From the sequence record OP380604.1: a stretch of DNA of 64,000 bases. The stretch is one strand, 5' to 3'. Shown in pieces: positions 1 through 14,455 of the stretch (positions are counted from its first letter, which is position 1; every line of letters starts with the position of its first letter). The notes under the pieces were generated by a model. The model saw nothing but the letters and a program-made list of their open reading frames with translations, had not been told where the DNA came from and searched no databases. Position numbers and translations under genes: made by a program.

Positions 1-69
1 GTAGCTCATTGGTAGAGCACTCCCCTGATAAGGGAGGGGTAGACAGTTCAACTCTGTCCACGGCTACCA
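1..69 (+). tRNA. tRNA-Ile(GAU), 5' end truncated by window
   Basis: D arm GCTC/GAGC, anticodon stem CTCCC/GGGAG with loop CTGATAA, T arm GACAG-TTCAACT-CTGTC, ends ACCA. Confidence 0.9.
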
Positions 70-94
70 AATTCAACAACAATGAGAGAATAAA

Positions 95-190
95 ATGAAT
101 CTAATAATCCCGGTATTGTTCTTGTGTGATAACGATCATCAAGACTGTCACCCAGATGGATGTTTTTATTGTTCGCATTATTATTTGTAG
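95..190 (+). CDS. 31-aa Cys/His-rich micropeptide (MNLIIPVLFLCDNDHQDCHPDGCFYCSHYYL)
   Basis: Read manually; GAGAG upstream of ATG; fills gap between tRNAs. Confidence 0.4.
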   Translation: MNLIIPVLFLCDNDHQDCHPDGCFYCSHYYL

Positions 191-197
191 TTTAAAC

Positions 198-272
198 GGT
201 GTATTAGTATAATGGCTATTATTCGTGACTGTCTATCACAAGATACGGGTTCGATTCCCGTATACACCGCCA
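198..272 (+). tRNA. tRNA-Asp(GUC)
   Basis: Acceptor GGTGTAT/ATACACC, loop CTGTCTA, T loop TTCGATT, GCCA. Confidence 0.92.
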
Positions 273-558
273 GATTTTCTGCCTAGCAGGAAAGAAAGAA
301 CTTACCCGACAAAAGTTTAGTTCTTAGTTCTTTGAATAGTTTGACTGGATTCACTTCTGCAAACACATACAAACTCGAAATCTACTATTAATGGATAGCA
401 CTCCTTTACTTCGGTACTTGGATGTGCGGCTGAGAGGGAACAGCATATAAAAGTAACGCGGGTTAGTCACCGCTCCCGTATGTGAATCCGAAGACTTGCG
501 ATAATCACTTGCAAATAGTGATTATTCTAATGTATACTTTCGAGTATCTATTAGAATC

Positions 559-634
559 GGGGGTTTAGCTCAGTTGGGAGAGCAACTGGTTTGCAACCAG
601 TAGGTCAAGGGTTCGAATCCCTTAACTTCCACCA
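559..634 (+). tRNA. tRNA-Ala(UGC)
   Basis: Cloverleaf, G3.U70, loop TTTGCAA, ACCA. Confidence 0.95.
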
Positions 635-641
635 AATTTAA

Positions 642-716
642 GCGGGATTAGCTCAGAGGTAGAGCGTCAGCCTTCCAAGCTGTTCGTCGCCGATTCGAAT
701 TCGGTATCCCGCTCCA
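642..716 (+). tRNA. tRNA-Gly(UCC)
   Basis: GCGGGAT/ATCCCGC, loop CTTCCAA, TCCA. Confidence 0.95.
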
Positions 717-722
717 GACATT

Positions 723-797
723 GTGCCGGTAGCCAAGTGGTAAGGCAAGTGATTGCAAATCACTTTATCGTCTGTTCAAATCAGATCCGGTACTCCA
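723..797 (+). tRNA. tRNA-Cys(GCA)
   Basis: GTGCCGG/CCGGTAC, loop TTGCAAA, U73, CCA. Confidence 0.93.
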
Positions 798-813
798 TAA
801 TTGAGGGTCAACG

Positions 814-909
814 ATGTTGATTAAATCGATTTTAAAGATGTATACTGATAACTGTTGGCGTTGTGGTTATTACGGCAGTAAATGCATTTGTGATAGTCCA
901 TACGCTTGA
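814..909 (+). CDS. 31-aa CxxC...CxC micropeptide (MLIKSILKMYTDNCWRCGYYGSKCICDSPYA)
   Basis: Read manually; GAGGG RBS at 803-807; four Cys in zinc-ribbon-like spacing. Confidence 0.45.
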   Translation: MLIKSILKMYTDNCWRCGYYGSKCICDSPYA

Positions 910-933
910 TCAAACAACATTGAGAAATAAGTT

Positions 934-1359
934 ATGAGCTTACCTAGTTATGCGCTGTTCATGAAGAACGGCGATTGTGTTGGGTCATGCTTTATCAACT
1001 GCGGTTGGTGGCATGATGAACCTCGCACACTGAAACAAATAATTCGTTATACCGAAACCGATGAATGTCCTATTGACTATGATAGCGTAATCGCGTATGG
1101 TGTTACGTATAGCAATGACTTAGAATTCGAGCTTCTGAAAGCAGAAGAAACGGAAGCTAAGTTAAAAGAGATCGCTGAAAATAAGCGTAAGCAAAGTTGG
1201 GAAGATTTACATCAGAAGATGATCGAACGGATGAAACCGATTGATCGAATGCTTCCTGAATTGATTGCTGCTGAAATATACGGAGTTCAGCCAATGAATG
1301 AACATGTTCCTAACGTTTTTTCGTTGAAGGTAGTTTACGGCGATGATATTTCTTGCTAA
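934..1359 (+). CDS. Hypothetical protein whose C-terminus resembles the T4 gp23 major capsid segment containing the Gol peptide
   Basis: RMLPELIAAEIYGVQPMNEHVPNVFSLKVVYG vs gp23 RAIPNLIAFDICGVQPMNSPTGQVFALRAVYG. Confidence 0.75.
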   Translation: MSLPSYALFMKNGDCVGSCFINCGWWHDEPRTLKQIIRYTETDECPIDYDSVIAYGVTYSNDLEFELLKAEETEAKLKEIAENKRKQSWEDLHQKMIERMKPIDRMLPELIAAEIYGVQPMNEHVPNVFSLKVVYGDDISC

Positions 1360-1543
1360 GATACGTTATATGAAAAGCGAATACATGGGTTCATCTAAAT
1401 CATTCGATACCATTAAACTGGTAGAAGCAGAAGATGCAGACGAGGCCGATAGCAAAGTTCGCGAATATTACAACGACAAAAGTTCAGATTATGGCACATA
1501 TTATTCTGTGCTGGATGTTTCGATTGAAGAACCGATTAGGTGA
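1343..1543 (+). CDS. Hypothetical protein
   Basis: 66-aa ORF tiling with neighbours. Confidence 0.65.
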   Translation: MIFLAKIRYMKSEYMGSSKSFDTIKLVEAEDADEADSKVREYYNDKSSDYGTYYSVLDVSIEEPIR

Positions 1544-1546
1544 ATT

Positions 1547-1735
1547 ATGAGTAAAGAAATTCGAATGAGGTTTACATTAAAAGAACTGAAACAAATGATT
1601 GAACTTGCGGAAACCAATAACACAACTCTCGTTGATGTTGGTTATACCCCGGGTAGTATCAGTTCTATGGTTAGAGCTAAACCTGTTGTTAAAGATGCCG
1701 AATTCGTAGACATTACCGATTACGATAGTTGGTAA
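1547..1735 (+). CDS. Hypothetical protein
   Basis: 62-aa ORF, AGGTG RBS. Confidence 0.7.
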   Translation: MSKEIRMRFTLKELKQMIELAETNNTTLVDVGYTPGSISSMVRAKPVVKDAEFVDITDYDSW

Positions 1736-1745
1736 AAATAATTAT

Positions 1746-1816
1746 AGGGGCGTAGCAAATCGGTTATGCGGCGGATTCCAAATCCGTTGAGGTGGGTTCG
1801 ACTCCTACCGCCCCTG
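1746..1816 (+). tRNA. tRNA-Trp(CCA), CCA end not encoded
   Basis: AGGGGCG/CGCCCCT, loop TTCCAAA, T loop TTCGACT. Confidence 0.9.
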
Positions 1817-1825
1817 CAAAATAAC

Positions 1826-1901
1826 GCGCCGTTAGCTTAGTCGGTAGAGCATCGGACTTTTAATCCGAGGGTCGGTGATTCGAGTTCACCACGGCGCACC
1901 A
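1826..1901 (+). tRNA. tRNA-Lys(UUU)
   Basis: GCGCCGT/ACGGCGC, loop CTTTTAA, ACCA. Confidence 0.95.
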
Positions 1902-2113
1902 AATAGTCGAGTCATGTTGTTAGTCATGACTAACAATGTGGCGACAGGCTATAAAAAAGCGATAGATTGAAGAAGGGGCGAATAACTTAAACGTTACTAT
2001 TGACTTCCTCGCGCTTCTGTTACTGCGGCTTATGAGCGGTGGTAATAGTTAAATCTCTTTACAACACCAAGTGTTGATTATTGCCTCGGTATCTGATACT
2101 CTGGATACCGTCT

Positions 2114-2188
2114 AGTGAATTAGCTCAGAGGTAGAGCAAGTGCTTCATACGCACTGGGTCACTGGTTCGAATCCAGTATTCACTACCA
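2114..2188 (+). tRNA. tRNA-Met(CAU), elongator type
   Basis: AGTGAAT/ATTCACT, loop TTCATAC, ACCA. Confidence 0.9.
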
Positions 2189-2230
2189 AATAATCGCGCT
2201 TAAACCGCTGATTCACGTTTAAGCCTTCTC

Positions 2231-2304
2231 GGGGACGTAGATAACTACACAATCGCAGGTCACTGGGATCTGAGATACGGGTGGAAATCCCGTCGTCTCC
2301 ACCA
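2231..2304 (+). ncRNA. tRNA-like RNA with Ala-type acceptor and non-canonical loops
   Basis: GGGGACG/CGTCTCC+ACCA (G3.U70), stems GAT/ATC, CAGGT/ATCTG, ACGGG/CCCGT; loops lack D-loop GG, U33 and TTC. Confidence 0.7.
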
Positions 2305-2308
2305 AATA

Positions 2309-2435
2309 TAAGTGCATTGCCCTAAACATCATTGGACGAGATAAGCCCTCGTATGGAGCCAACGAGCCGCAAGCTTGTAGCAATCAAAGGCTAGTCAGTG
2401 GGTACTACCTGACGGGGATCGCGACAGTGCATTTA
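2309..2435 (+). ncRNA. Putative multibranch structured RNA
   Basis: 11-bp closing stem 2309-2319/2425-2435; inner hairpins ACGAG/CTCGT and GTCAG/CTGAC; no ORF. Confidence 0.45.
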
Positions 2436-2444
2436 AATTTGGTA

Positions 2445-2451
2445 CTAAATA
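2445..2451 (+). promoter_or_regulatory. Putative T4-type late promoter (CTAAATA)
   Basis: Same heptamer recurs at 2899, 4690, 6777, 20924, 54084 just upstream of genes. Confidence 0.5.
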
Positions 2452-2475
2452 GACTTGCTATTAAAGGAGTTTATA

Positions 2476-2715
2476 ATGAGTAATGATTTAGACGCTCGCG
2501 CCAATCGTGGCTCGGGTAATCAATGCAGCAAAGCATGGTACGACGCTCCATTGTGGAAAAACGTTGGTCCACTTGCTAGAAAGAAAGCAGCGGAAGCCGC
2601 TGAAAAAGAAAAACAAAAAGATGTTTACTCTACTGCGGAAACATGCGATAATGTTCCTGTTGTTGAAGAAGACTTAAAAGCAAAACAAAGACGATTGTTT
2701 AGTTTCGCTTACTGA
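2476..2715 (+). CDS. Hypothetical protein (79 aa)
   Basis: AAGGAG RBS before ATG 2476; ends QRRLFSFAY. Confidence 0.7.
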   Translation: MSNDLDARANRGSGNQCSKAWYDAPLWKNVGPLARKKAAEAAEKEKQKDVYSTAETCDNVPVVEEDLKAKQRRLFSFAY

Positions 2716-2719
2716 CAGA

Positions 2720-2795
2720 TCTCCGTTCGTCTAGTGGACTAGGACACTGCCCTTTCACGGCGGTAACATGGATTCGAATTCCATACGGAGAACCA
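2720..2795 (+). tRNA. tRNA-Glu(UUC)
   Basis: TCTCCGT/ACGGAGA, loop CTTTCAC, ACCA. Confidence 0.95.
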
Positions 2796-2815
2796 AATTG
2801 ATTAGTGCGCTAAGA

Positions 2816-2888
2816 TGCGAGTTGGAGGAGAGGCCGTCCTCGCTGGGCTCATATCCCAGAGATCACCTGTTCGAATCAGGTACTCGCT
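2816..2888 (+). tRNA. Initiator-type tRNA-Met(CAU) embedded in a 14-bp flanking stem, no CCA
   Basis: 1:72 mismatch (T.T), GGG/CCC anticodon stem, loop CTCATAT; flanks 2802-2815/2889-2902 pair. Confidence 0.8.
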
Positions 2889-2914
2889 TCTTAGCGTACT
2901 AAATAAAGAATAAT

Positions 2915-3006
2915 GGATGTGCTGCAATGACGGTGGTATTGCACCAGACTGTAAATCTGGCCCCACAGGGTAAACATTGTAGGTTCGACTCCTACCGCAT
3001 CCACCA
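2915..3006 (+). tRNA. tRNA-Tyr(GUA)
   Basis: GGATGTG/CGCATCC, loop CTGTAAA, long variable arm, ACCA. Confidence 0.93.
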
Positions 3007-3012
3007 AATTTC

Positions 3013-3084
3013 GCCTCTATAGCTCAGTGGTAGAGCAACTGCCTTGTAAGCAGTAGGTCCTCGGTTCGAGTCCGAGTGGGGGCT
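3013..3084 (+). tRNA. tRNA-Thr(UGU), CCA not encoded
   Basis: GCCTCTA/TGGGGGC, loop CTTGTAA. Confidence 0.9.
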
Positions 3085-3168
3085 CAGTAAGAGGGATCCA
3101 GATGCCCCGTTTGCAGCATCTGGTATGTAACTCGTTACATAAATGCTTTCTTTCGAGTGATCATTTAT

Positions 3169-3244
3169 GTGACGGTAGTTCAGTTGGTAGAACTCCAGGT
3201 TGTGATCCTGGTAGTCACGGGTTCGAAGCCCGTCCGTCACCCCA
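3169..3244 (+). tRNA. tRNA-His(GUG)
   Basis: GTGACGG/CCGTCAC, loop TTGTGAT, C73, CCA; -1 base is T. Confidence 0.93.
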
Positions 3245-3249
3245 ATCAC

Positions 3250-3325
3250 GGGTCCTTAGCTCAGTTAGTAGAGCATATGCCTGAAGAGCATAGTGTCCTC
3301 GGTGCGATTCCGAGAGGGCCCACCA
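3250..3325 (+). tRNA. tRNA-Phe(GAA)
   Basis: GGGTCCT/AGGGCCC, loop CTGAAGA, T loop TGCGATT, ACCA. Confidence 0.9.
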
Positions 3326-3350
3326 GTTTAATCGCTTTGAAAGGTGAAAT

Positions 3351-3456
3351 CGCTAATGCTTTTAAGTGCAATGAGATAACTTCTCGAAAGTCGGGATATA
3401 GATTGCCCCGTCGGTATTGATTTCATGTAGAGTTCGATTCTCTACCTTAGCGTCCT
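3351..3456 (+). ncRNA. tRNA-like RNA with enlarged central domain
   Basis: CGCTAA/TTAGCG acceptor-like stem, T arm GTAGAG-TTCGATT-CTCTAC, ATGAGA/TTTCAT stem enclosing ~44 nt. Confidence 0.55.
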
Positions 3457-3472
3457 ATTATAAAAGAATATT

Positions 3473-3549
<77 letters not shown>

Positions 3550-3675
3550 GAGTTGCCTGTAAAGGCCCGTTAAAGAGAATGCTAACAATGTCCTAGGAAA
3601 CTTTGTTAGAAGTCCAGCTGAAAATTCCCTCTCCCGTTTTGAACGGTGATGCGATTTAAGGGGCGAGTGATTCAC

Positions 3676-3704
3676 TTGTGGATCATTTCAAAGTATTCTA
3701 ATAT
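3676..3704 (+). promoter_or_regulatory. Putative sigma70-like promoter with -10 in hairpin loop
   Basis: TTGTGG-N17-TAATAT; arms 3687-3699/3705-3717. Confidence 0.45.
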
Positions 3705-3835
3705 AGAGTTCTTTGAATTGATTCAAGCGTTGCATCGTTTGAATATGTGGAGTTACCTTAGTAGGCCGTAGAGATACGTTGTCCGAAAGATAAGACGATG
3801 ATCCACGTTAAACGTTCATATTCGTCCCAGTTTAT

Positions 3836-3911
3836 AGGGGATTCGCCTAGTTGGCCCAAGGCACCGGGTTTGATCCCGGTATCACAAGTTCGAATCTTGT
3901 ATCCCCCGCCA
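3836..3911 (+). tRNA. tRNA-Gln(UUG)-like with 6-nt anticodon loop
   Basis: AGGGGAT/ATCCCCC, CCGGG-TTTGAT-CCCGG, T loop TTCGAAT, GCCA. Confidence 0.75.
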
Positions 3912-3919
3912 AATTTAGC

Positions 3920-3948
3920 TTGCAAAGGCTAAAATGAGCTGCTATGAT
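3920..3948 (+). promoter_or_regulatory. sigma70-like promoter with -10 in hairpin loop
   Basis: TTGCAA-N17-TATGAT; arms GAGCTGC/GTAGCTC. Confidence 0.55.
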
Positions 3949-4050
3949 TCCCGTAGCTCGTTAAATTATCAAACGGGAAGGTGATGCGCGTATGTAGCCA
4001 GAACGTAATGTTCAAGAGTCATGACGACATAGAGCCGTGTCGAAGAATTT

Positions 4051-4142
4051 GGAAGCGTGGCAGAGTATGGCTTATTGCAACTGACTTGAAATCAGTCAGT
4101 CGAGAAATCGGCCCGTGGGTTCAAATCCTACCGCTTCCGCCA
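4051..4142 (+). tRNA. tRNA-Ser(UGA)
   Basis: GGAAGCG/CGCTTCC, loop CTTGAAA, long variable arm, GCCA. Confidence 0.95.
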
Positions 4143-4166
4143 AATCAAACAATAGAGAGTTATATT

Positions 4167-4388
4167 ATGAAAGCGACAAAACAAGATCTTGAACTAGCAT
4201 CCCGTTTCGCTGATAAAGCTGATTCATACGGTTTCGCTACTACTCAAGGTGATGCCAAATGTACCAATCAACAAATCGAAAAGCTGCTAAAGCTTGGACT
4301 GATTAAAGTTACTCGCGGTGTTCACTGCATTGGTCAGAAAGATTTTGGTGGTTTTGTTCGAAGAGGCACTCACTATTGCAAAGCTTAA
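4167..4388 (+). CDS. Hypothetical protein (73 aa)
   Basis: GAGAG RBS, ATG 4167 (longer ORF-track start overlaps tRNA-Ser). Confidence 0.7.
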   Translation: MKATKQDLELASRFADKADSYGFATTQGDAKCTNQQIEKLLKLGLIKVTRGVHCIGQKDFGGFVRRGTHYCKA

Positions 4389-4498
4389 AACGAGAGATCG
4401 AGGAAAATGTAAGAGCCTCGTTCGAGTTATCCGGCAAGCGTGTTACTGATTCTCAATGGGAACAGATTAAACGAGTTGCTGAATACATCAAAGAACAT

Positions 4499-4586
4499 GG
4501 AGAAATGACAGAGAGGCCGAACGTAGCGGATTGCTAATTCGTAGGCCCGCAAGGGTCCGTGGGTTCGAATCCCACTTTCTCCTCCA
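4499..4586 (+). tRNA. tRNA-Ser(GCU)
   Basis: GGAGAAA/TTTCTCC, loop TTGCTAA, long variable arm, CCA. Confidence 0.92.
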
Positions 4587-4588
4587 AT

Positions 4589-4666
4589 GCACCAATGATG
4601 GGAATTGGTCTACCTGGCTGATTTAGATTCAGTCGCTTCTCGGTTCGAATCCGAGTTGGTGCACCA
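4589..4666 (+). tRNA. tRNA-Leu(UAG) with short variable loop
   Basis: GCACCAA/TTGGTGC, loop TTTAGAT, variable loop only CGCTT, ACCA. Confidence 0.88.
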
Positions 4667-4689
4667 AATAAATTGGTAGCCGCATACGT

Positions 4690-4696
4690 CTAAATA
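4690..4696 (+). promoter_or_regulatory. Putative late promoter (CTAAATA) for the endonuclease
   Basis: 16 nt upstream of ATG 4713. Confidence 0.55.
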
Positions 4697-4712
4697 ATAC
4701 AAATAAAGTATT

Positions 4713-5441
4713 ATGGAGAACGTTATGGCTACTCATAGAAAACCGGAACAAATAGAAACTACCGATCTTTGTAAATATGGATGCGGAAATATCGCAAAAT
4801 ATAAAAGTGTTGGTGGGAATCTGATGTGTGAATGTTCGTCAAATAAATGTCCGGTTAATATAAAAAAGAATTCAGAAAAACTAAAAGCACTATATGATTC
4901 TGGTATGAGAAAATCCGGAGCGGAGCTGTATAAATCTCTTAGCCACGACATCAAAACTAGAATGTCGTGGAGTAAAGGATTAACAAAAGAAACCAATTCC
5001 GAACTGGAGAGACCAACTTTGGTTGGTAAACGGTTTGGTGCATCATTGTACGGCCACACAGAAGAATCAAAGCGCAAGATTTCCATAGCCAGAACGGAGT
5101 GGCTAAAGAAGACTGAAAACCGAACGAATCTTGGAAGATTCAAAAAGTCTTGGATGGAAGAAACATTTGAATCGTATCTAAATGAAAATAAAATTACGGG
5201 TTGGATAGCAGAGAAACACTTCTACTCTCCTGTTACAAAGAAAAATTATTATGTTGACTTTCTCTTTCAAGAAAAGATGCTTATATTAGAATTGGATGGA
5301 ACCCAACATAGAAAGTCTATAGAACATGATAAACAAAGAGACTTGTGGTTCAATAGTATTGGATACAAAGTTATAAGAGTTCCGGTTGACGAATTCAAAC
5401 GGAGATTTTTCTCCGGGGTTGGGTTTATCGATCTACTGTAA
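4713..5441 (+). CDS. Free-standing homing-type endonuclease: Cys-rich N-terminus, NUMOD3-like motif, DUF559/Vsr-like PD-(D/E)XK domain
   Basis: CKYGCG..CECSSNKCP; GHTEESKRKISIAR; YVDFLFQEKMLILELDGTQH..DKQRDLWFNSIGYKVIRV. Confidence 0.82.
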   Translation: MENVMATHRKPEQIETTDLCKYGCGNIAKYKSVGGNLMCECSSNKCPVNIKKNSEKLKALYDSGMRKSGAELYKSLSHDIKTRMSWSKGLTKETNSELERPTLVGKRFGASLYGHTEESKRKISIARTEWLKKTENRTNLGRFKKSWMEETFESYLNENKITGWIAEKHFYSPVTKKNYYVDFLFQEKMLILELDGTQHRKSIEHDKQRDLWFNSIGYKVIRVPVDEFKRRFFSGVGFIDLL

Positions 5442-5446
5442 TAAAT

Positions 5447-5471
5447 AAAAGGGAGCTTCGGCTCCCTTTTT
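5447..5471 (+). terminator. Intrinsic terminator
   Basis: AAAAGGGAGC-TTCG-GCTCCCTTTTT. Confidence 0.85.
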
Positions 5472-5486
5472 CATTAGGAGTATAAT

Positions 5487-5873
5487 ATGAGTTTCAAAGA
5501 GTTTAAAGGCGATACAAACTCAAGTGTTGGCGAACTAATTTCCAAGCTTCTGAAAAGCGTGGCATACGTTCATCACCAACACCTGACTACTACTATCTAT
5601 AGCCGTCACAAAGCGCTCCAAGCGTATTACGAAGAACTTCCAGAGCTGATTGATAGCTTTGCAGAATGCGCTATCGCTCGTGGATATGCTCAGAGTTTTA
5701 CAGCTACTCATGCGGAAGTTGAAGTTGAAATGATGATTGACAATTTCCTGCAAGAGTGTACTATGGTGCATGAGTATTTGGAGACTAAACGCCATTTCGA
5801 TCTGGTGAATACACTGGAAGATATCATGACGTTTTTGACTTCGATTAGATACAAATTGAATCTTAAAGGTTGA
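5487..5873 (+). CDS. Ferritin/Dps-like four-helix protein
   Basis: HHQHLTTTIYSRHKALQAYYEELPELIDSFAE motif typical of T4-like phage Dps-like proteins. Confidence 0.7.
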   Translation: MSFKEFKGDTNSSVGELISKLLKSVAYVHHQHLTTTIYSRHKALQAYYEELPELIDSFAECAIARGYAQSFTATHAEVEVEMMIDNFLQECTMVHEYLETKRHFDLVNTLEDIMTFLTSIRYKLNLKG

Positions 5874-5899
5874 CTATCATTAGGAACTGTGTAATAATG
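5870..5899 (+). promoter_or_regulatory. Early-type promoter with inverted repeat around -10
   Basis: TTGACT..TAATAAT; arms TAGGAACTGT/ATGGTTCCTA. Confidence 0.65.
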
Positions 5900-5913
5900 G
5901 TTCCTATAAACAT

Positions 5914-5988
5914 GGCCCCGTAGCTGGAGGGTTCAAGCTGGCAGCTCATAACTGCTTGATGTGGGTTCGATTCCCACCGGGGCCACCA
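5914..5988 (+). tRNA. tRNA-Ile2(CAU) (lysidine type)
   Basis: GGCCCCG/CGGGGCC acceptor and loop CTCATAA resemble enterobacterial ileX; ACCA. Confidence 0.8.
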
Positions 5989-9555: not shown

Positions 9556-10155
9556 ATGGCGAAACTTTTTTTCACGCATAGTGCGATGAACGTGGGCAAG
9601 AGCACTCAATTACTGCAAGTGGCTTTCAACTACAACGAGAGAAATCAAAACGTTCTGCTGTACAAACCTGCGTTTGACACTAGAACAGAAGGTACGATTG
9701 GATCACGTATCGGTATCCAGCGTGAGTGTCGCTGTGTGCATGTTGACGAAAACATGTTTACAATGATCGAAAAAGAGAGTAAACTGTCCGATATCGCCTG
9801 TGTTCTTGTTGATGAAGCACAGTTCCTGACTGAAAAACAAGTGTGGGAACTGTCCGACGTTGTTGACAAGCTGGATATCCCTGTTATGTGCTACGGACTG
9901 CGTACCGATTTTCTCGGTAACTTGTTCCCTGGCTCTAGGGCATTACTTTCGATTTCAGATGAAATTAGACAACTGTCTGGTATCTGTGATTGTGGTAGAA
10001 AATCCTGTATGGTAGCTCGCGTTGATGATAACGGCAATGTTATCCGTCGAGGTGAACAAATTTGCATTGGGGCTGAACAACGTTACATTTCGTTCTGCCG
10101 CAAGTGCTGGAAAAACAAACTGTCCTATGATTGGGACAAATTCAAACAAACCTGA
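9556..10155 (+). CDS. tk: Thymidine kinase (type II)
   Basis: HSAMNVGKSTQLL P-loop, LVDEAQFL, CYGLRTDF, CDCG and CRKC zinc motifs. Confidence 0.97.
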   Translation: MAKLFFTHSAMNVGKSTQLLQVAFNYNERNQNVLLYKPAFDTRTEGTIGSRIGIQRECRCVHVDENMFTMIEKESKLSDIACVLVDEAQFLTEKQVWELSDVVDKLDIPVMCYGLRTDFLGNLFPGSRALLSISDEIRQLSGICDCGRKSCMVARVDDNGNVIRRGEQICIGAEQRYISFCRKCWKNKLSYDWDKFKQT

Positions 10156-10168
10156 AAGAGGTAATTCT

Positions 10169-11605
10169 GTGTCTAATTTTATGAATGCAATGGTACAAGC
10201 TCAAGCCCGCACTGCTAACGGTGCTGTCACTAACTACACCACTGGCGACAAGTGTCTGAATCTGTTTTCTCAGATTGGTTCCTCTCGCGGGAAAGATCTG
10301 ACCCAGATGTTTGTTGATGCTTATACCGAGTCTCCTGACTGGGCTGTTCGCATTCTGCAATGGGCTCGCGATATTCGCGGTGGTGCCGGTGAACGTGAAC
10401 AATTCATCCGCCTGCTGAAAGTCCTTGCGCATCGTCACCCTGTTGACGCCACCGTAGTTCTGATGAACACTCCTGAAATCGGTCGCTTCAAAGACGTGGT
10501 AGCAATGTTCAATTCTCCGATTCAGGACGCTGCTGTGGCTATCATGGTTGATGCAATCATGACCAAGCAAAACGGTCTTGCTGCAAAGTGGGCACCTCGG
10601 AAGGGCAAAGAAGCCGGTATTCTGGCCAAAGCTATGCGAATGACTGCTAAAGAATATCGTCACACTATCGTCCGTATGTCGAACACCGTTGAACAAAAGA
10701 TGTGTGCTCGTCAGTGGGACGGTATTGAGTTCGGTAAACTGCCGTCTGTTGCATCTGCTCGATATCAGAAAGCATTCCTGAAAAACGCGAACGAGCGTTA
10801 TGTTGCTTATCTTGAGTCTCTGAAAAAGGGTGAGGCTAAGATCAACGCTGCTGCGGTTTATCCGTATGACATGATCAAATCCCTGCGTACCGGTTCTTCT
10901 GTTGCTGCTGATGCACAATGGAAAGCACAACGCGACTGGATGGCTGGCTCCACTGAAAACGTAATCGCGATGGTTGACGTTTCTGGCTCTATGGGCACTC
11001 CGACCGCTGTTGCTGGCTTGTCTGCTATGGACATCGCGATTTCTCTGGGTCTGTACATCGGCGAACGCTCGCGCGGTGTGTTCAAGAACGAAGTGATTAC
11101 CTTCGATGATAATCCTGAGTTCTACAACATCAAAGCGAAAGGCGACGATCTGCAAAGCATGGTGAATCATCTGGGACGCGCTCCGTGGGGTGGCTCTACC
11201 AACTTTGCTGGTGCATTCAAGATCATTCTTGATCGCGCTGTACGCAATCGAGTTCCGCAAGAAGATATGCCGACTATGATGGTTGTCTTGTCTGACATGG
11301 AATTCAACGTTGCTGATGGTGGCTATAGTGGTTACTATCGTATGCGTGACCGTGAGCCTACCAACTTTGAGGTGATTCGTCAGACTTACCGCGACGCTGG
11401 TTACGAAATGCCGAAACTGGTGTTCTGGAATCTTTGCCCGCGTCCGACTAACAATCCGGTGACCAAAGATGATCAAGGCACTGCTCTTGTTTCTGGTTTT
11501 AGTCCCGCAATCATGGAGACAATCCTGAGTGCGAAAGAGTTTAACCCGATGCAAATCATGCTCGACAAGATCATGAGCGACCGTTACGTCGGTATCGACT
11601 TCTAA
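10169..11605 (+). CDS. DUF2828/UCP015417 helical (TROVE-like) domain plus vWA domain protein
   Basis: RDIRGGAGER, KWAPR, VEQKMCA..W..I.F.KLPS, VDVSGSM MIDAS, GSTNF, VLSDMEF, LVFWNL; GTG start with GAGG RBS. Confidence 0.88.
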   Translation: MSNFMNAMVQAQARTANGAVTNYTTGDKCLNLFSQIGSSRGKDLTQMFVDAYTESPDWAVRILQWARDIRGGAGEREQFIRLLKVLAHRHPVDATVVLMNTPEIGRFKDVVAMFNSPIQDAAVAIMVDAIMTKQNGLAAKWAPRKGKEAGILAKAMRMTAKEYRHTIVRMSNTVEQKMCARQWDGIEFGKLPSVASARYQKAFLKNANERYVAYLESLKKGEAKINAAAVYPYDMIKSLRTGSSVAADAQWKAQRDWMAGSTENVIAMVDVSGSMGTPTAVAGLSAMDIAISLGLYIGERSRGVFKNEVITFDDNPEFYNIKAKGDDLQSMVNHLGRAPWGGSTNFAGAFKIILDRAVRNRVPQEDMPTMMVVLSDMEFNVADGGYSGYYRMRDREPTNFEVIRQTYRDAGYEMPKLVFWNLCPRPTNNPVTKDDQGTALVSGFSPAIMETILSAKEFNPMQIMLDKIMSDRYVGIDF

Positions 11606-13201: not shown

Positions 13202-13678
13202 ATGAGTATGAAATATCTGACTAAACTGCTGTTTCCTAATACCTATACTGCTATTGTCGAAGAAGGCAAGTGGCTTGGCATGGAAGCAAAGCGTAAAGAA
13301 CAAGAAGAACAGAAAGAGAAAGATCGTCTGTTGTCACTTTCATACAAACGTCCTCTTGGTATTCCCATGATCTCGTTCGACGGTGCTGGTAATGTTCGAG
13401 TTGTAGTAAACACGGAATACATGTATGATGGTGCCGTAACTCGTTCCGTTGATCTGATTTCAGGTGAGGAGTTTATTGACTTCACCACTCAGATTCGATA
13501 CAGTGAGGAGTTGGCGGGATTAATTGCACGTAATAAGATCGAGGATGTTTACGCGCTGATTCATCGCGGTAACGCCAAGATCATGAAAGTAAATCCGAAT
13601 CGGGAAACGTTGATTCGTTTGAAGTTCAAACTGGCAGTGAAAAATTTCAACGAAAAAGGTTTACCCTCTAAGAAATAA
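13202..13678 (+). CDS. Hypothetical protein
   Basis: 158 aa, GAGG RBS. Confidence 0.75.
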   Translation: MSMKYLTKLLFPNTYTAIVEEGKWLGMEAKRKEQEEQKEKDRLLSLSYKRPLGIPMISFDGAGNVRVVVNTEYMYDGAVTRSVDLISGEEFIDFTTQIRYSEELAGLIARNKIEDVYALIHRGNAKIMKVNPNRETLIRLKFKLAVKNFNEKGLPSKK

Positions 13679-13688
13679 GTGTTAAGAT
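13660..13688 (+). promoter_or_regulatory. Promoter for the tRNA-like RNA trio
   Basis: TTTACC-N17-TAAGAT ending ~7 nt before element A. Confidence 0.6.
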
Positions 13689-13691
13689 TGT

Positions 13692-13821
13692 TTTGTTGTC
13701 GCGATTAGTTCAGCGGGAGAGCGCCTCTGATCGCAGAGAAGTATCGGGACCGGTTCGATTCCGTTAAGTGTGGGCACATTGAGAAACGTCACTGGTTCGA
13801 ATCCAGTATCGCGACAACAAA
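13692..13821 (+). ncRNA. tRNA-scaffold RNA A (extended acceptor stem, large insert with second TTCGA loop, no CCA)
   Basis: TTTGTTGTCGCGAT/ATCGCGACAACAAA; D arm GTTC/GAGC; T arm ACTGG-TTCGAAT-CCAGT. Confidence 0.7.
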
Positions 13822-13958
13822 CAACATTATGCTGGCGGTTCGTCTAATTGGTAGGACACTGTAAAATTCATTCTGATAAGAATGTTTTCCGCAATAAATA
13901 CTCGCCTGTTAAGCCTGTAATCTGGGTTCGAGGCCCAGACCGCCAGCATAGTGTTGTT
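13820..13958 (+). ncRNA. tRNA-scaffold RNA B (20-bp terminal stem, ~60-nt insert, no CCA)
   Basis: AACAACATTATGCTGGCGGT/ACCGCCAGCATAGTGTTGTT; D arm GTCT/GGAC; T arm CTGGG-TTCGAGG-CCCAG. Confidence 0.7.
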
Positions 13959-13966
13959 AAAAATTT

Positions 13967-14088
13967 GGGGAAGTAGCTCAGTGGTAGAGCAGTAGTCGCA
14001 AAAAGCGGAATCTGATTAAGATTCTTTACCGCAAACCCTTGCAAAATCAAACTGTTGGTCGTGGGTTCGAATCCCACCTTCTCCGCCA
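13967..14088 (+). ncRNA. tRNA-scaffold RNA C (54-nt insert in anticodon loop, G3.U70, GCCA end)
   Basis: GGGGAAG/CTTCTCC, D arm GCTC/GAGC, GTAGT/ACTGT stem, T arm GTGGG-TTCGAAT-CCCAC. Confidence 0.78.
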
Positions 14089-14137: not shown

Positions 14138-14416
14138 ATGGAATTTCTAACTGAGAAAAAACTCCGCAATCTGACTACCGAACGTCTGAATGCACTGCGT
14201 AAAACTGTGTTGAAGTCTCGCGCTGCTGCACAATATCATGCAGATCAACAGGATTGTTCCGATGCAGATCGCGAACGCGCTCATAATCTGGCCGAGTATT
14301 ACGATTTGATCAAGTCTATCATGGAAGAGCGTGAGCACATCGAAAAACCAGCCAAAGACAAGTCTCGTCCTCGTCGCGACGGACGTAACGTAAAACGTTC
14401 TTGGGATAGTGAGTGA
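14138..14416 (+). CDS. Hypothetical basic protein
   Basis: 92 aa, AGGA RBS. Confidence 0.75.
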   Translation: MEFLTEKKLRNLTTERLNALRKTVLKSRAAAQYHADQQDCSDADRERAHNLAEYYDLIKSIMEEREHIEKPAKDKSRPRRDGRNVKRSWDSE

Positions 14417-14432
14417 TCAGTTAAGATAAATT

Positions 14433-14455
14433 AAGGCACCTTCGGGTGCCTTTTT
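14433..14455 (+). terminator. Intrinsic terminator
   Basis: AAGGCACC-TTCG-GGTGCCTTTTT. Confidence 0.9.

What the first reader, a model, noticed from the sequence alone, without database searches (positions are those of the whole stretch)
13660..14088. Promoter-driven trio of tRNA-scaffolded RNAs whose anticodon loop is replaced by a conserved, covarying UCUGAU hairpin insert
Seen: three adjacent elements (A 13692-13821, B 13820-13958, C 13967-14088), 7 kb from the main tRNA array and behind their own TTTACC-N17-TAAGAT promoter. Each keeps an acceptor stem, D arm and TTCGA T arm but carries a 54-65 nt insert where the anticodon loop belongs. The B and C inserts are homologous: TCTGAT-AAGAATGTTTTCCGCAA (13872-13894) vs TCTGATTAAGATTCTTTACCGCAA (14011-14034), 20/24 identical. 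Both fold into a 6-bp hairpin with two compensatory changes (C-G to G-C, T-A to A-T). A has the same TCTGAT in CTCTG-ATCG-CAGAG plus a second TTCGATT loop. A and B lack CCA and have acceptor stems extended by 7 and 13 bp; C ends GCCA and has G3.U70. Known: T4 makes tRNA-ended stable RNAs of unknown function (species 1/2), and phage tRNAs counter anticodon-nuclease defences. Inference: a family of tRNA-mimic RNAs that display a protein-binding hairpin on a tRNA body, e.g. decoys for anticodon nucleases or tRNA-modifying toxins, or guides/scaffolds for a phage RNP. The inserts are too short for self-splicing introns.
Basis: partly seen in the sequence, partly recalled or inferred. Interest (0 to 1): 0.88.

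Follow-up and report, generated by a model that had tools for sequence, protein, structure and literature searches.

The report
Phage tRNA-shaped RNAs carrying a conserved hairpin cassette
Two of the three odd tRNA-like genes in this Aeromonas phage belong to a previously undescribed, phage-wide family in which a conserved ~42-nt hairpin cassette is built into a tRNA body next to (or instead of) the anticodon arm, most likely making a non-decoding tRNA mimic rather than an ordinary tRNA.

Summary
The trio is real and conserved in all seven Aeh1-like Aeromonas T4-type phages. B and C share a ~42-nt cassette: A-run, 6-8 bp hairpin with apical UCUG/AGA, then a CNGCA box. A covariance model and pattern scans find the cassette in more than 60 tRNA-shaped genes on unrelated uncultivated phage contigs. 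It is absent from Rfam, from the literature I could search, and from bona fide cellular genomes. The hairpin covaries strongly. The cassette sits at the hinge between position 26 and the anticodon stem, fills the anticodon loop (C), or replaces the whole anticodon arm.

All 21 genes of one tRNA-body lineage, found blind to the cassette, carry it, while their anticodon triplet is hypervariable. These genes often duplicate a canonical tRNA in the same array, as B does for tRNA-Asn.

Element A is a different thing: a double-T-arm tRNA-like RNA.

A structurally Ro60-like protein (DUF2828+vWA) is encoded 2 kb upstream and near many cassette genes. It is generally syntenic with phage tRNA arrays, and only 2 of 80 independent Ro60-like loci carry the cassette.

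Best reading: a retained protein-recognition arm on a tRNA chassis, giving a non-decoding mimic (0.45). Main rival: a new small intervening sequence (0.2).

The parts
13659..13688 (+).
   Evidence: Sequence. GGTTTAC is invariant and the -10 is TAAGAT/TAATAT/GAAGAT in 7 phages. Not listed by the sigma-70 scan (8/12). The same GTTTACA-N17-TAnnnT layout recurs in array intergenic DNA.
13692..13821 (+). Element A: double-T-arm tRNA-like RNA. 13-bp terminal stem (13693-13705/13808-13820), D arm 13708-13722, 5-bp hairpin with tetraloop 13725-13738, inner domain 13744-13782 containing T-like arm 13749-13765, true T arm 13791-13807. No CCA.
   Evidence: Rfam tRNA 32.8 bits. RNAalifold structure. Compensatory pairs in every helix across 7 phages. 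Not hit by cassette model R1. Parts annotated as tRNA-OTHER / tRNA-Ala in PX29 / phiWae14. One of 19 nested double-T-arm genes among 127 pattern hits in phage contigs.
13820..13958 (+). Element B: tRNA-shaped RNA closed by a 20-bp terminal stem (13820-13839/13939-13958), D arm 13842-13857, cassette, degenerate anticodon arm (13901-13917, loop CUGUUAA 13906-13912), T arm 13922-13938. No CCA.
   Evidence: MFE -56.4 kcal/mol, z = -6.9. Terminal stem intact in all 7 phages apart from an alignment gap at its outermost pairs in three; T stem covaries. The insert plus anticodon-like region is the most conserved part of the trio. The D arm and the 'UC' at positions 8-9 match the 'group 1' body lineage.
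13856..13897 (+). Cassette copy in B (A-run 13863-13866, hairpin 13869-13884, U-run 13885-13888, CCGCAA 13889-13894)
   Evidence: R1 49.0 bits, E = 3.7e-9. Hairpin invariant in 7 phages; A-run/U-run pairing mostly kept.
13967..14088 (+). Element C: tRNA with acceptor stem 13967-13973/14078-14084, D arm 13976-13990, anticodon stem 13992-13996/14051-14055, a 54-nt 'loop' holding the cassette, T arm 14061-14077, and encoded GCCA 14085-14088
   Evidence: Rfam tRNA 54.3 bits. Annotated tRNA-Val(CAC) in Aeh1 and two-piece tRNA-Leu in PX29. No 7-nt U33 loop can be recovered. T stem and the 27-43 pair covary.
13995..14037 (+). Cassette copy in C (A-run 14000-14004, hairpin 14008-14024, UUUACCGCAA 14025-14034)
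   Evidence: R1 46.5 bits, E = 1.7e-8. A-U to U-A swap in the phiWae14/phiAS5 hairpin.
10127..11602 (+). Ro60-like protein gene (DUF2828 helical domain + DUF7788/vWA). Candidate, unproven, partner.
   Evidence: Pfam and PHROG 850 'RNA-binding protein'. AF2 pLDDT 86. Foldseek top 7 PDB hits are all Ro60, E ~1e-8, TM ~0.58, including phage phiLo Ro60. Found in flanks of 13 cassette loci, but only 2/80 independent DUF2828 loci carry the cassette.
14138..14452 (+). Downstream rI.1-like ORF (14138-14416) and terminator-like hairpin (14433-14452), the likely end of the transcription unit
   Evidence: Aeh1 annotation rI.1. PHROG 9405. Terminator scan.

Best explanation
B and C are members of a phage-specific family of non-decoding tRNA mimics. 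A tRNA chassis (acceptor stem, D arm, T arm, often an encoded CCA) carries a conserved ~42-nt cassette. The cassette consists of a 5' A-run, a 6-8 bp hairpin whose apical U-C-U/A-G-A pairs and closing G..A are nearly fixed, a U-run that pairs back to the A-run, and a single-stranded CNGCA box. It projects from the hinge between position 26 and the anticodon stem.

Inferred mechanism. The trio is transcribed early, from its own GTTTAC-type promoter and/or by read-through. The tRNA-like fold gives stability and, for C, RNase P / CCA-type end processing. The cassette stays in the mature RNA as a sequence-specific docking arm for a protein. The anticodon arm, where present, displays a chosen anticodon next to that arm. 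The RNA would therefore act in the conflict over tRNAs, as a bait, decoy or repair platform for enzymes that recognise anticodon stem-loops, and not in decoding. The best, though weak, candidate partner is the Ro60-like protein encoded 2 kb upstream.

What is shown: the family, its structure and covariation, its placement, its constitutive presence, anticodon hypervariability, frequent redundancy with canonical tRNAs, and restriction to phages. What is inferred: retention in the mature RNA, protein binding, and the biological role. Element A is a separate, conserved double-T-arm tRNA-like RNA co-transcribed with B and C.
For: (1) The family is real. The strict pattern hits only B and C in the window (0 expected) and, after filtering, about 35 unrelated tRNA-shaped genes in IMG/VR. 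Model R1 recovers more than 60 copies at 34-52 bits.
(2) The RNA structure is under selection. The unforced pair 16-29 is U-A 22 / A-U 16 / C-G 8 with 0 unpaired; the covariation score is 0.365 against 0.113 shuffled (0/500) and at most 0.127 when slid. A previously forced pair covaries in the pattern-blind set (UCUG/AGA to CCUG/AGG).
(3) Scaffold-only members (L078, L109, L094, L034) have acceptor stem, covarying D-like hairpin, cassette, T arm and NCCA but no anticodon arm. In them the cassette is the payload, and no deletion turns them into tRNAs.
(4) All 21 genes of one body lineage, retrieved by their 5' half alone, carry the cassette; there are no cassette-free alleles.
(5) In that lineage the anticodon triplet varies (GUC, GUU, UUC, UCU, UCG, GCC) while the loop flanks, stem, body and often the discriminator stay fixed.
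(6) In 23 of 38 loci with at least 10 canonical tRNAs, a canonical tRNA with the same anticodon is present. avDM12 and Aeh1 have their own tRNA-Asn besides B.
(7) B has a 20-bp closed terminal stem and no CCA, and its cassette plus anticodon-like region is the most conserved stretch of the trio.
(8) C has no recoverable U33 anticodon loop.
(9) The surroundings are RNA/tRNA-related: a Ro60-like protein, RNase H-like and YqeY-like proteins, and a weak sub-threshold match to a calcineurin-type phosphoesterase recur near cassette genes.
Against: There are no expression or end-mapping data, so retention is inferred. Many members are otherwise perfect tRNAs with canonical U33/A37 loops and encoded CCA, and in 4 of 5 two-nucleotide cases the stem is completed by bases upstream of the cassette, which is intron-like. 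No partner protein is identified: only 2 of 80 Ro60-like loci carry the cassette, and Ro60-like genes lie next to tRNA arrays anyway (33 of 80). Redundancy of 61% is suggestive, not decisive, because arrays hold many anticodons. Cassette-like units also occur outside tRNA bodies, which fits a processing signal or a selfish repeat equally well.
Confidence: 0.45

Rival explanations
1. The cassette is a new class of small (40-55 nt) tRNA intervening sequence. It interrupts the 5' strand of the anticodon stem, is recognised through its conserved hairpin by a protein endonuclease (phage or host), and is excised. The exons are then joined by a phage RNA ligase / end-healing system to give ordinary decoding tRNAs. 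B and C would be degenerate or specialised derivatives.
For: Members span at least 12 anticodons with canonical loops, 4-5 nt variable loops, 7-bp acceptor stems and encoded CCA, and lie inside tRNA arrays. Split stems occur: CG|AGA, CG|AGC, CG|UCA and CC|UCC are completed by the bases right after position 26. L048's 21-tRNA array lacks a canonical tRNA-Tyr while its cassette gene has a GUA loop. There is a precedent for 'enigmatic', highly conserved introns in Lak megaphage tRNAs (PMC6784885). A weak, sub-threshold phosphoesterase match recurs near cassette genes. T4-type phages carry RNA ligases and PNK (general knowledge).
Against: Scaffold-only members have nothing left to splice into a tRNA. 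There is no presence/absence polymorphism in 21 orthologues. The anticodon is hypervariable on a fixed body and discriminator, unlike working tRNAs. Duplication of a canonical anticodon is frequent. B has a closed 20-bp stem and no CCA; C gives no canonical loop. The split-stem statistic is weak overall (13/21 against up to 10/21 in shifted controls). Distances from the cassette core to the putative splice sites vary, and no bulge-helix-bulge motif is evident.
Confidence: 0.2
2. The cassette RNAs are the Y-RNA equivalents of the phage's Ro60-like (DUF2828+vWA) protein. The cassette helix is the Ro60-binding site and the tRNA body is the effector or tether module, as in bacterial YrlA. Together they form an RNP for RNA quality control or repair, or for hijacking host PNPase.
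For: ORF 10127-11602 has a Ro60 fold: all top Foldseek hits are Ro60, including phage phiLo Ro60. Y RNAs are encoded next to Ro60 genes, include tRNA-like modules, and occur in phages (PMC4201824, PMC12135203). A DUF2828 gene lies within the fetched flank of 13 cassette loci: ~100 nt away in L086, ~450 nt in L101, 1.3 kb in L048, 1.8 kb in L090, and 2 kb in the window. A and B have the long 5'/3' terminal stems typical of Y RNAs.
Against: Only 2 of 80 independently sampled DUF2828 loci (+-10 kb) have a cassette. DUF2828 is generally beside tRNA arrays (33 of 80 with at least 3 tRNAs), which explains the one-sided co-localisation. The closest non-Aeromonas relative (L017, 64% identical protein, same synteny) has no trio. 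The YrlA model scores 15.4 against a gathering score of 69, on a spurious B-T-arm/C-D-arm junction. The arm order is not permuted as in YrlA, and there is no GNCGAAN0-1G motif (sequence).
Confidence: 0.15
3. The cassette is a self-contained punctuation or selfish element of phage tRNA arrays. It would be an RNA processing signal (nuclease entry site) or a small mobile palindromic repeat that spreads by recombination among tRNA genes and spacers. The tRNA-embedded copies would be tolerated insertions with no function of their own.
For: Cassette or half-cassette units occur between genes and in tandem without tRNA bodies (L228; L215 8732-8778). (U/A)ACAGCAAA boxes follow CCA ends in several contigs. 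There are several copies per genome. Homing-type HNH endonuclease ORFs recur nearby. The cassette sits at slightly different positions in different bodies.
Against: It is constitutively present and sequence-conserved in all orthologues of a body lineage. Scaffold-only RNAs with covarying helices and encoded CCA argue for selection on the whole RNA. The CAGCAA box is not enriched on the transcribed strand of the window (5 observed, 5.2 expected). B's cassette is invariant across four diverged phage lineages.
Confidence: 0.12
4. The trio are decaying tRNA pseudogenes with random insertions.
For: The Aeh1 genome paper lists three 'pseudo' tRNAs (PMC1524935). ARAGORN rejects all three. B's anticodon stem is degenerate.
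Against: The trio is conserved at 88-99% identity across three genera, with compensatory changes in nearly every helix. The cassette is shared with unrelated phages and covaries.
Confidence: 0.03

Closest known systems
Bacterial/phage Y RNAs of the YrlA type (Rfam RF02553) with Ro60/Rsr
   Same: A non-coding RNA that combines a tRNA-like module (acceptor, D and T arms; substrates of tRNA enzymes) with a separate helix, at the anticodon-arm position, that binds a protein. It is encoded near a Ro60-type gene and is known in phages (PMC4201824, PMC12135203).
   Different: YrlA is circularly permuted (T arm before D arm; ends in the Ro60-binding stem) and carries a GNCGAAN0-1G strand. Here the tRNA order is normal, the ends are in the acceptor stem, the cassette sequence is unrelated, many members keep a full anticodon arm and CCA, the Rfam score is far below threshold, and the Ro60-like gene is a distant DUF2828-type homologue whose loci mostly lack the cassette.
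'Enigmatic' conserved tRNA introns of Lak megaphages (Devoto et al. 2019, PMC6784885)
   Same: Phage tRNA genes interrupted by short, highly conserved, non-group-I sequences with no Rfam match. They begin with a small hairpin followed by an A-rich linker. Element A resembles them in having a nested T arm.
   Different: Lak inserts are 80-115 nt, sit at the canonical 37/38 position, and contain their own mini tRNA (acceptor stem plus T arm). The B/C cassette is ~42 nt, has no tRNA-like part, lies 5' of the anticodon loop, and also exists on scaffolds without an anticodon arm.
T4 stable RNAs species 1 and 2 (rnaC, rnaD)
   Same: Small stable RNAs of unknown function encoded with the tRNAs of a T4-type phage. 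rnaC ends in an acceptor stem plus T arm, preceded by an A-run and a hairpin (PMC3014915).
   Different: There is no cassette hit in the T4 region and no sequence similarity beyond the T arm. The genomic position differs: in T4 they directly follow tRNA-Arg, whereas here the trio lies 7.7 kb from the array, before rI.1.
tmRNA tRNA-like domain
   Same: The scaffold-only members have an acceptor stem, T arm, D-analogue and CCA, with the anticodon arm replaced by another RNA element.
   Different: There is no mRNA-like ORF and there are no pseudoknots; the RNAs are ~95-140 nt. The G3.U70 alanine identity pair is present only in avDM12/Ah1 C. There is no Rfam tmRNA hit.
Phage tRNAs that escape or neutralise anticodon-nuclease defences (T5 tRNA-Lys vs PARIS, tRNA-Tyr vs retron PtuAB, mycobacteriophage tRNAs; from my own knowledge of the 2023-2024 literature)
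   Same: Phage-encoded tRNA-shaped RNAs whose anticodon arm is altered in the context of tRNA-targeting immunity. This fits the variable anticodon and the duplication of canonical tRNAs seen here.
   Different: Those are normal-sized, decoding-competent tRNAs with point changes. Here a 42-nt structured arm is added or the anticodon arm is missing, and no link to any defence system has been shown.
Archaeal non-canonical (bulge-helix-bulge) tRNA introns
   Same: Short protein-spliced introns that can lie at positions such as 26/27-30/31 in the anticodon stem.
   Different: No BHB motif is evident at the boundaries. The conserved interior hairpin is unlike BHB introns, whose interiors are not conserved. 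No splicing endonuclease homologue was seen, and the host is bacterial.

Membership tests
tRNA (Rfam RF00005 / ARAGORN) | Cloverleaf scoring above the Rfam gathering score (29 bits) | tested here: inconclusive
   C 54.3 and A 32.8 pass only by skipping 53-55 nt; B 13.6 fails. ARAGORN calls none of them.
tRNA (Rfam RF00005 / ARAGORN) | 7-nt anticodon loop with U33 and purine 37 on a 5-bp stem | tested here: not met
   A has a 4-nt loop. C has a 54-nt loop with no recoverable U33 heptaloop. B has CUGUUAA on a 3/5 (contiguous) or 4/5 (split) stem.
tRNA (Rfam RF00005 / ARAGORN) | Free 3' NCCA end and aminoacylation | not testable with these tools
   C encodes GCCA. A and B have no CCA, and their ends are buried in 13- and 20-bp duplexes. 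Charging needs acid-gel assays.
YrlA / Y RNA | Match to Rfam RF02553 at gathering score (69 bits) | tested here: not met
   The best hit is 15.4 bits, spanning the B T arm and the C D arm, which is the adjacency artefact the YrlA authors warn about.
YrlA / Y RNA | Permuted tRNA-like domain (T arm 5' of D arm) with the 5'/3' ends forming the Ro60-binding stem | tested here: not met
   All three have the normal order D arm then T arm. A and B do have long 5'/3' terminal stems, but these extend the acceptor stem.
YrlA / Y RNA | GNCGAAN0-1G (CGAA) Ro60-binding strand | tested here: not met
   The only CGAA occurrences in 13692-14088 are the T loops (GTTCGAA), read directly from the sequence.
YrlA / Y RNA | Encoded adjacent to a Ro60/TROVE gene | tested here: inconclusive
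   A Ro60-fold protein gene lies 2.1 kb upstream with five ORFs between. Co-localisation is seen in 13 cassette loci, but only 2/80 in the reverse test, and there is general synteny with tRNA arrays.
YrlA / Y RNA | Physical binding to Ro60 | not testable with these tools
   Needs EMSA or co-IP.
Group I intron in tRNA | A ribozyme core of at least ~200 nt (P3-P9), located in the anticodon loop | tested here: not met
   The inserts are 41-55 nt, and there is no Rfam intron hit even at E<=10.
Lak-type phage tRNA intron | 80-115 nt insert at 37/38 containing a mini tRNA (acceptor stem plus T arm) | tested here: not met
   B and C have no nested T arm and a different position. A has a nested T-like arm, but it lies after a tetraloop hairpin and not at 37/38.
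Archaeal BHB intron | Bulge-helix-bulge at both exon-intron boundaries | tested here: inconclusive
   By inspection the putative 5' boundary lies inside a helix in L024 and the boundaries are variable. No dedicated BHB search was run.
T4 rnaC/rnaD | Sequence or structure homology to T4 species 1/2 RNAs | tested here: not met
   The cassette model has no hit in T4 68-76 kb. Only the generic T arm is shared.
New cassette family defined here (model R1) | A-run + covarying hairpin with apical UCU/AGA + CNGCA box, inside a tRNA-shaped gene | tested here: met
   B 49.0 bits and C 46.5 bits; A is not hit.

The most novel reading that the evidence does not exclude
Phages carry a class of 'anticodon-display' RNAs: a constant tRNA chassis, a conserved protein-docking cassette at the D/anticodon hinge, and a rapidly switchable anticodon triplet. 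These RNAs shadow the phage's own canonical tRNAs. They would serve as baits, decoys or repair platforms against host anticodon nucleases and other tRNA-targeting defences, possibly as the RNA subunit of an RNP built on the Ro60-like protein that sits next to phage tRNA arrays.
Probability: 0.25. Interest if true: 0.9.

Novelty: new variant of a known kind. Interest (0 to 1): 0.8.

Why it matters
Phage tRNA arrays are increasingly seen as weapons in the conflict over host tRNAs. A conserved, structured RNA cassette grafted onto tRNA bodies in many unrelated large phages adds a component to that picture that I could not find described. It is absent from Rfam and from the searchable literature, and has been mis-annotated as tRNA-Val, tRNA-Leu-with-intron or 'pseudo'.

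If the cassette is retained, these are natural tRNA-scaffolded RNAs with a swappable anticodon. That is a new form of tRNA mimicry and a ready handle for finding the protein that reads it. If it is removed, it is a new, ribozyme-free intron class in bacterial viruses. Either outcome is directly testable in a cultured system (Aeh1 or avDM12 on Aeromonas hydrophila).

The side observation that a Ro60-fold protein family (DUF2828) is habitually encoded beside phage tRNA arrays gives a concrete entry point to the function of that very large uncharacterised family.

Tried and rejected
1. BLAST-level searches of GenBank phages found only the Aeh1-like Aeromonas group. Queries with two non-Aeromonas cassette genes found nothing.
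2. An exact-core DNA search and a flanking-protein (rI.1-like) search in IMG/VR returned only the same four isolate genomes.
3. The DUF2828 protein has no sequence-level PDB match to Ro60; the link needed AF2 plus Foldseek.
4. In-silico splicing followed by ARAGORN does not discriminate: many different deletions all give 'tRNAs'.
5. The split-stem statistic is weak once shifted controls and non-independence are considered.
6. The idea that CAGCAA is a general processing box was rejected for this window: there is no plus-strand enrichment, and the minus-strand excess looks like coding bias.
7. The idea that B supplies a missing tRNA-Asn was rejected, because a canonical (long-variable-arm) tRNA-Asn exists.
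8. Homology to T4 rnaC/rnaD was rejected.
9. The cassette as a hammerhead or other known ribozyme was rejected: the loop is variable and there is no Rfam hit.
10. The cassette's TTTAC(A/C) as a functional -35 was considered and dropped, because no -10 follows at the right spacing (by inspection).
11. Seven Acidobacteriaceae and a few other hits in the genome scan were not cassette matches under R1.
Full report
**Source and context.** The window is the last 64 kb of Aeromonas phage avDM12-TAAL (OP380604, 100% identity), an Aeh1-like T4-type phage. All genes run on the + strand. A 20-tRNA array occupies 1-5988. The finding lies 7.7 kb further on, in the 459-nt gap between ORF 13202-13678 and an rI.1-like ORF 14138-14416, which is followed by a terminator-like hairpin at 14433-14452.

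**Observation.** Three tRNA-shaped elements are present exactly as described.
- Rfam's tRNA model passes C (54.3 bits) and A (32.8 bits) only by skipping 53-55 nt. B fails at 13.6 bits. ARAGORN calls none of the three.
- The same trio occurs in Ah1, Aeh1, PX29, AsFcp_1/2/4, phiWae14 and phiAS5 at 88-99% identity.
- Pieces of it have been annotated inconsistently: tRNA-Val(CAC) of 122 nt in Aeh1, a two-piece tRNA-Leu plus 'tRNA-OTHER' in PX29, and tRNA-Ala in phiWae14. The Aeh1 genome paper lists 'Val CAC' and three 'pseudo' tRNAs (PMC1524935).
- Nearly every helix carries compensatory changes across the seven phages, so these are selected RNAs and not decaying pseudogenes.
- The promoter TTTACC-N17-TAAGAT exists and its GTTTAC is invariant. 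It falls below the generic sigma-70 scan threshold. The same GTTTACA-N17-TAnnnT design recurs in the array's intergenic DNA, and Aeh1-type phages are reported to use T4-like early promoters.

**Anatomy, corrected.**
- C keeps all four arms, including a 5-bp anticodon stem (13992-13996/14051-14055), but its 'loop' is 54 nt and no U33 heptaloop can be recovered. It ends in an encoded GCCA. G3.U70 is found only in avDM12/Ah1.
- B is closed by a 20-bp duplex and has no CCA. After the D arm come the insert, then a degenerate anticodon arm whose loop CUGUUAA is an Asn loop, then the T arm.
- A is different. After the D arm there is a 5-bp hairpin with a tetraloop where the anticodon stem belongs. 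A 39-nt branched domain containing a second, covarying T-like arm follows, then the true T arm, all closed by a 13-bp terminal stem. In Aeh1 A's hairpin is CCUC-UAGCC-GAGG, so its 'UCUGAU' is coincidental.

**The B/C insert is a widespread cassette.** A pattern distilled from B and C (TCTG-N3-5-AGA-N9-GCAA-N20-45-GGTTCGA) matches only B and C in the window, with 0 expected by chance. After filtering for hairpin complementarity, T stem and acceptor pairing, about 35 non-Aeromonas loci remained, all of them tRNA-shaped genes.

An alignment of 46 distinct cassettes (A3) shows strong covariation at pairs the pattern did not force:
- Pair 16-29 is U-A 22, A-U 16, C-G 8, and is never unpaired.
- Pair 14-31 uses four pair types.
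- The covariation score is 0.365 against 0.113 in shuffles (0/500) and at most 0.127 in slid registers.

A covariance model (R1) scores B at 49.0 bits and C at 46.5 bits. It does not hit A. It recovers more than 60 copies across the held loci.

A later search blind to the cassette, using only the 5' half of one tRNA body, returned 21 distinct genes. All of them carry the cassette. They show covariation at a formerly forced pair (UCUG/AGA to CCUG/AGG), and only CAGCA of the 3' box is invariant.

The cassette has no Rfam match even at E<=10. I found no description of it in the literature. In one genome per 185,579 prokaryotic species, true R1 hits occur only on two contigs that look like mis-binned large phages.

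**Where the cassette sits.** In members with a clear anticodon arm, the cassette lies between position 26 and the anticodon stem. Sometimes it is 1-2 nt inside the stem, so that the first pairs are made by bases upstream of it: CG|AGA, CG|AGC, CG|UCA, CC|UCC, which is 4 of the 5 two-nucleotide cases. The overall split-stem statistic is weak once shifted controls are applied. In C-type genes the cassette follows a complete 5' stem strand. In a further subgroup (L078, L109, L094, L034) there is no anticodon arm at all: an acceptor stem, a D-like hairpin that covaries between contigs, the cassette, an A-rich linker, the T arm, the acceptor strand and NCCA. On one 163-kb contig, cassette and half-cassette units also occur in tandem between genes and in front of lone T-arm hairpins.

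**Retained arm or intron?**

*For an intervening sequence:* many members are otherwise perfect tRNAs inside arrays; the split stems look intron-like; one 21-tRNA array lacks a canonical Tyr while its cassette gene has a GUA loop; and there is the Lak megaphage precedent of 'enigmatic' conserved tRNA introns. Those, however, are 80-115 nt, sit at 37/38 and contain a mini tRNA, so they are a different element.

*For retention:*
- Scaffold-only members exist.
- There are no cassette-free alleles among 21 orthologues.
- On that constant chassis the anticodon triplet is hypervariable (GUC, GUU, UUC, UCU, UCG, GCC) without matching changes elsewhere.
- In 23 of 38 loci with at least 10 canonical tRNAs, a canonical tRNA with the same anticodon is present. 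This matches the window, where B shadows a canonical tRNA-Asn that sits in the array just upstream of the window.
- B's ends are buried in a 20-bp duplex, and B's cassette plus anticodon-like region is the most conserved part of the trio.

I therefore favour a retained, sequence-specifically recognised arm on a non-decoding tRNA mimic (0.45) over a new small intron (0.2).

**The Ro60 lead.** ORF 10127-11602, 2.1 kb upstream, is DUF2828 + DUF7788/vWA, and PHROG 850 calls it 'RNA-binding protein'. It has no sequence match to solved structures. An AF2 model (pLDDT 86) has Ro60 as its seven best PDB matches (E ~1e-8, TM ~0.58), including the Ro60 of Thermus phage phiLo.

Y RNAs are encoded next to Ro60 genes, carry tRNA-like modules and occur in phages (PMC4201824, PMC12135203). 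A DUF2828 gene lies in the fetched flank of 13 cassette loci, as close as ~100 nt (L086) and ~450 nt (L101).

The reverse test fails. Of 80 DUF2828 loci sampled independently (+-10 kb, 1.27 Mb), only 2 have a cassette, while 33 have at least 3 tRNAs (383 tRNAs in all). The Ro60-like gene is therefore generally syntenic with phage tRNA arrays, which is interesting in itself, and that explains most of the co-localisation. The nearest non-Aeromonas relative keeps the synteny but lacks the trio. YrlA's defining features (permuted arm order, CGAA strand, Rfam score) are not met. I keep 'Y-RNA-like partner of the Ro60-like protein' as a specific sub-hypothesis at 0.15.

Other recurrent neighbours are an RNase H-like PF04308 protein, a YqeY/GatB-like protein, homing-type HNH endonucleases, and a protein with a weak, sub-threshold match to calcineurin-type phosphoesterases. 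This looks like a tRNA/RNA-maintenance neighbourhood but does not single out a partner.

**Element A.** Its hallmark is two T-arm motifs ~38 nt apart inside one acceptor stem. Of the 127 hits, 19 are nested inside one acceptor stem plus D arm. They include Lak-type cases and whole tRNAs nested in another tRNA's anticodon loop. A is thus a conserved member of a loose class of nested or duplicated tRNA-like genes. It is co-transcribed with B and C but is not a cassette family member.

**Comparison and novelty.** Functionally, the closest analogues are YrlA-type Y RNAs and the tmRNA tRNA-like domain: a tRNA top half with another RNA element at the anticodon position. Among gene interruptions, the closest are the Lak introns. 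As phage biology, the closest are T4 species 1/2 RNAs, which have no cassette hit, and the anticodon-nuclease-evading phage tRNAs. The trio is a member of none of these. I class it as a new variant of a known kind (tRNA-scaffolded non-coding RNA, or interrupted tRNA gene). It is a new RNA family with wide distribution in uncultivated large phages and one cultured clade.

**Limits.** I had no transcript data. Many contigs are related, so counts are not independent events. Retention, protein binding and any defence-related role are inferences.

Noticed in passing
window 10127-11602; loci L135-L214: The very large DUF2828+vWA family (over 7,900 hits) has a Ro60 fold. In phage contigs it is habitually encoded next to tRNA arrays: 33 of 80 loci have at least 3 tRNAs within 10 kb, and there are 383 tRNAs in 1.27 Mb. 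This suggests a tRNA-related role for an uncharacterised family.
   Followed up: partly
L215 8965-9047 (OP380604 166964-167046, just upstream of the window); Aeh1 111227-111311: The phage's canonical tRNA-Asn(GUU) is 83-85 nt long and has a long, class-II-like variable arm (GGGUAAUAACCCUAU), which is unusual for tRNA-Asn.
   Followed up: no
window 3836-3911: ARAGORN reports a 'tRNA-???' with a two-base anticodon (tg). Rfam scores it 47.6 bits as tRNA. It is missing from the GenBank annotation of this record.
   Followed up: no
L265, L242, L290; L347, L293: In uncultivated phage contigs, complete tRNAs are nested inside the anticodon loop of another tRNA. Lak-type hairpin + mini-tRNA inserts occur in tRNA-Tyr/Thr outside Lak phages. 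Excision by RNase P and a 3' tRNA-processing nuclease would leave ligatable ends; this is speculation.
   Followed up: partly
L228 4380-5120 (-), contig CAYRBL010000001 (163 kb, binned as Bacteroides): Tandem cassette and half-cassette units, some without any tRNA body, lie directly beside a tmRNA gene (4011-4384). The contig looks like a large phage.
   Followed up: partly
L223/L225, contig JBBACR010000001 (425,361 bp): A contig deposited as a 'Candidatus Pacearchaeota' MAG has the same length as IMG/VR viral contig 3300035208_004923. It carries a 20-tRNA bacterial-type array with cassette genes and is probably a mis-binned jumbo phage.
   Followed up: no
L215 8640-8900 (avDM12 166.6-166.9 kb), conserved in Aeh1 L216 ~11500: Three GTTTACA-N17-TAnnnT early-promoter look-alikes lie in a 575-nt unannotated gap. 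Two are followed by GTTCAGCAA(T/C) boxes, and one overlaps a weak, scaffold-free cassette-like hit (R1 17.6 bits).
   Followed up: partly
window 4725-5438: A DUF559/HNH homing-endonuclease-like ORF sits inside the tRNA array. HNH endonuclease ORFs are also among the most frequent neighbours of cassette genes elsewhere.
   Followed up: no
cassette loci L022, L034, L044, L094, L132, L211 and others: A gene trio recurs near tRNA arrays of one phage clade: a protein with a weak, sub-threshold phosphoesterase match, the Ro60-like DUF2828 protein, and an RNase H-like PF04308 protein. A YqeY/GatB-like protein recurs in another clade.
   Followed up: partly
window, whole: CAGCAA is strongly strand-biased: 11 on the + strand and 44 on the - strand, against ~15 expected. 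This presumably reflects a coding bias for TTGCTG in + strand genes.
   Followed up: no
window 13997-14007 and 14041-14047 (element C) and orthologues: A direct repeat flanking C's cassette changes in parallel between lineages: CGCAAAA...UGCAAAA in avDM12 against CGAAAAA...CGAAAUC in phiWae14. This hints at alternative pairings with the GCG/UCG at 14005-14007, or at gene conversion.
   Followed up: no
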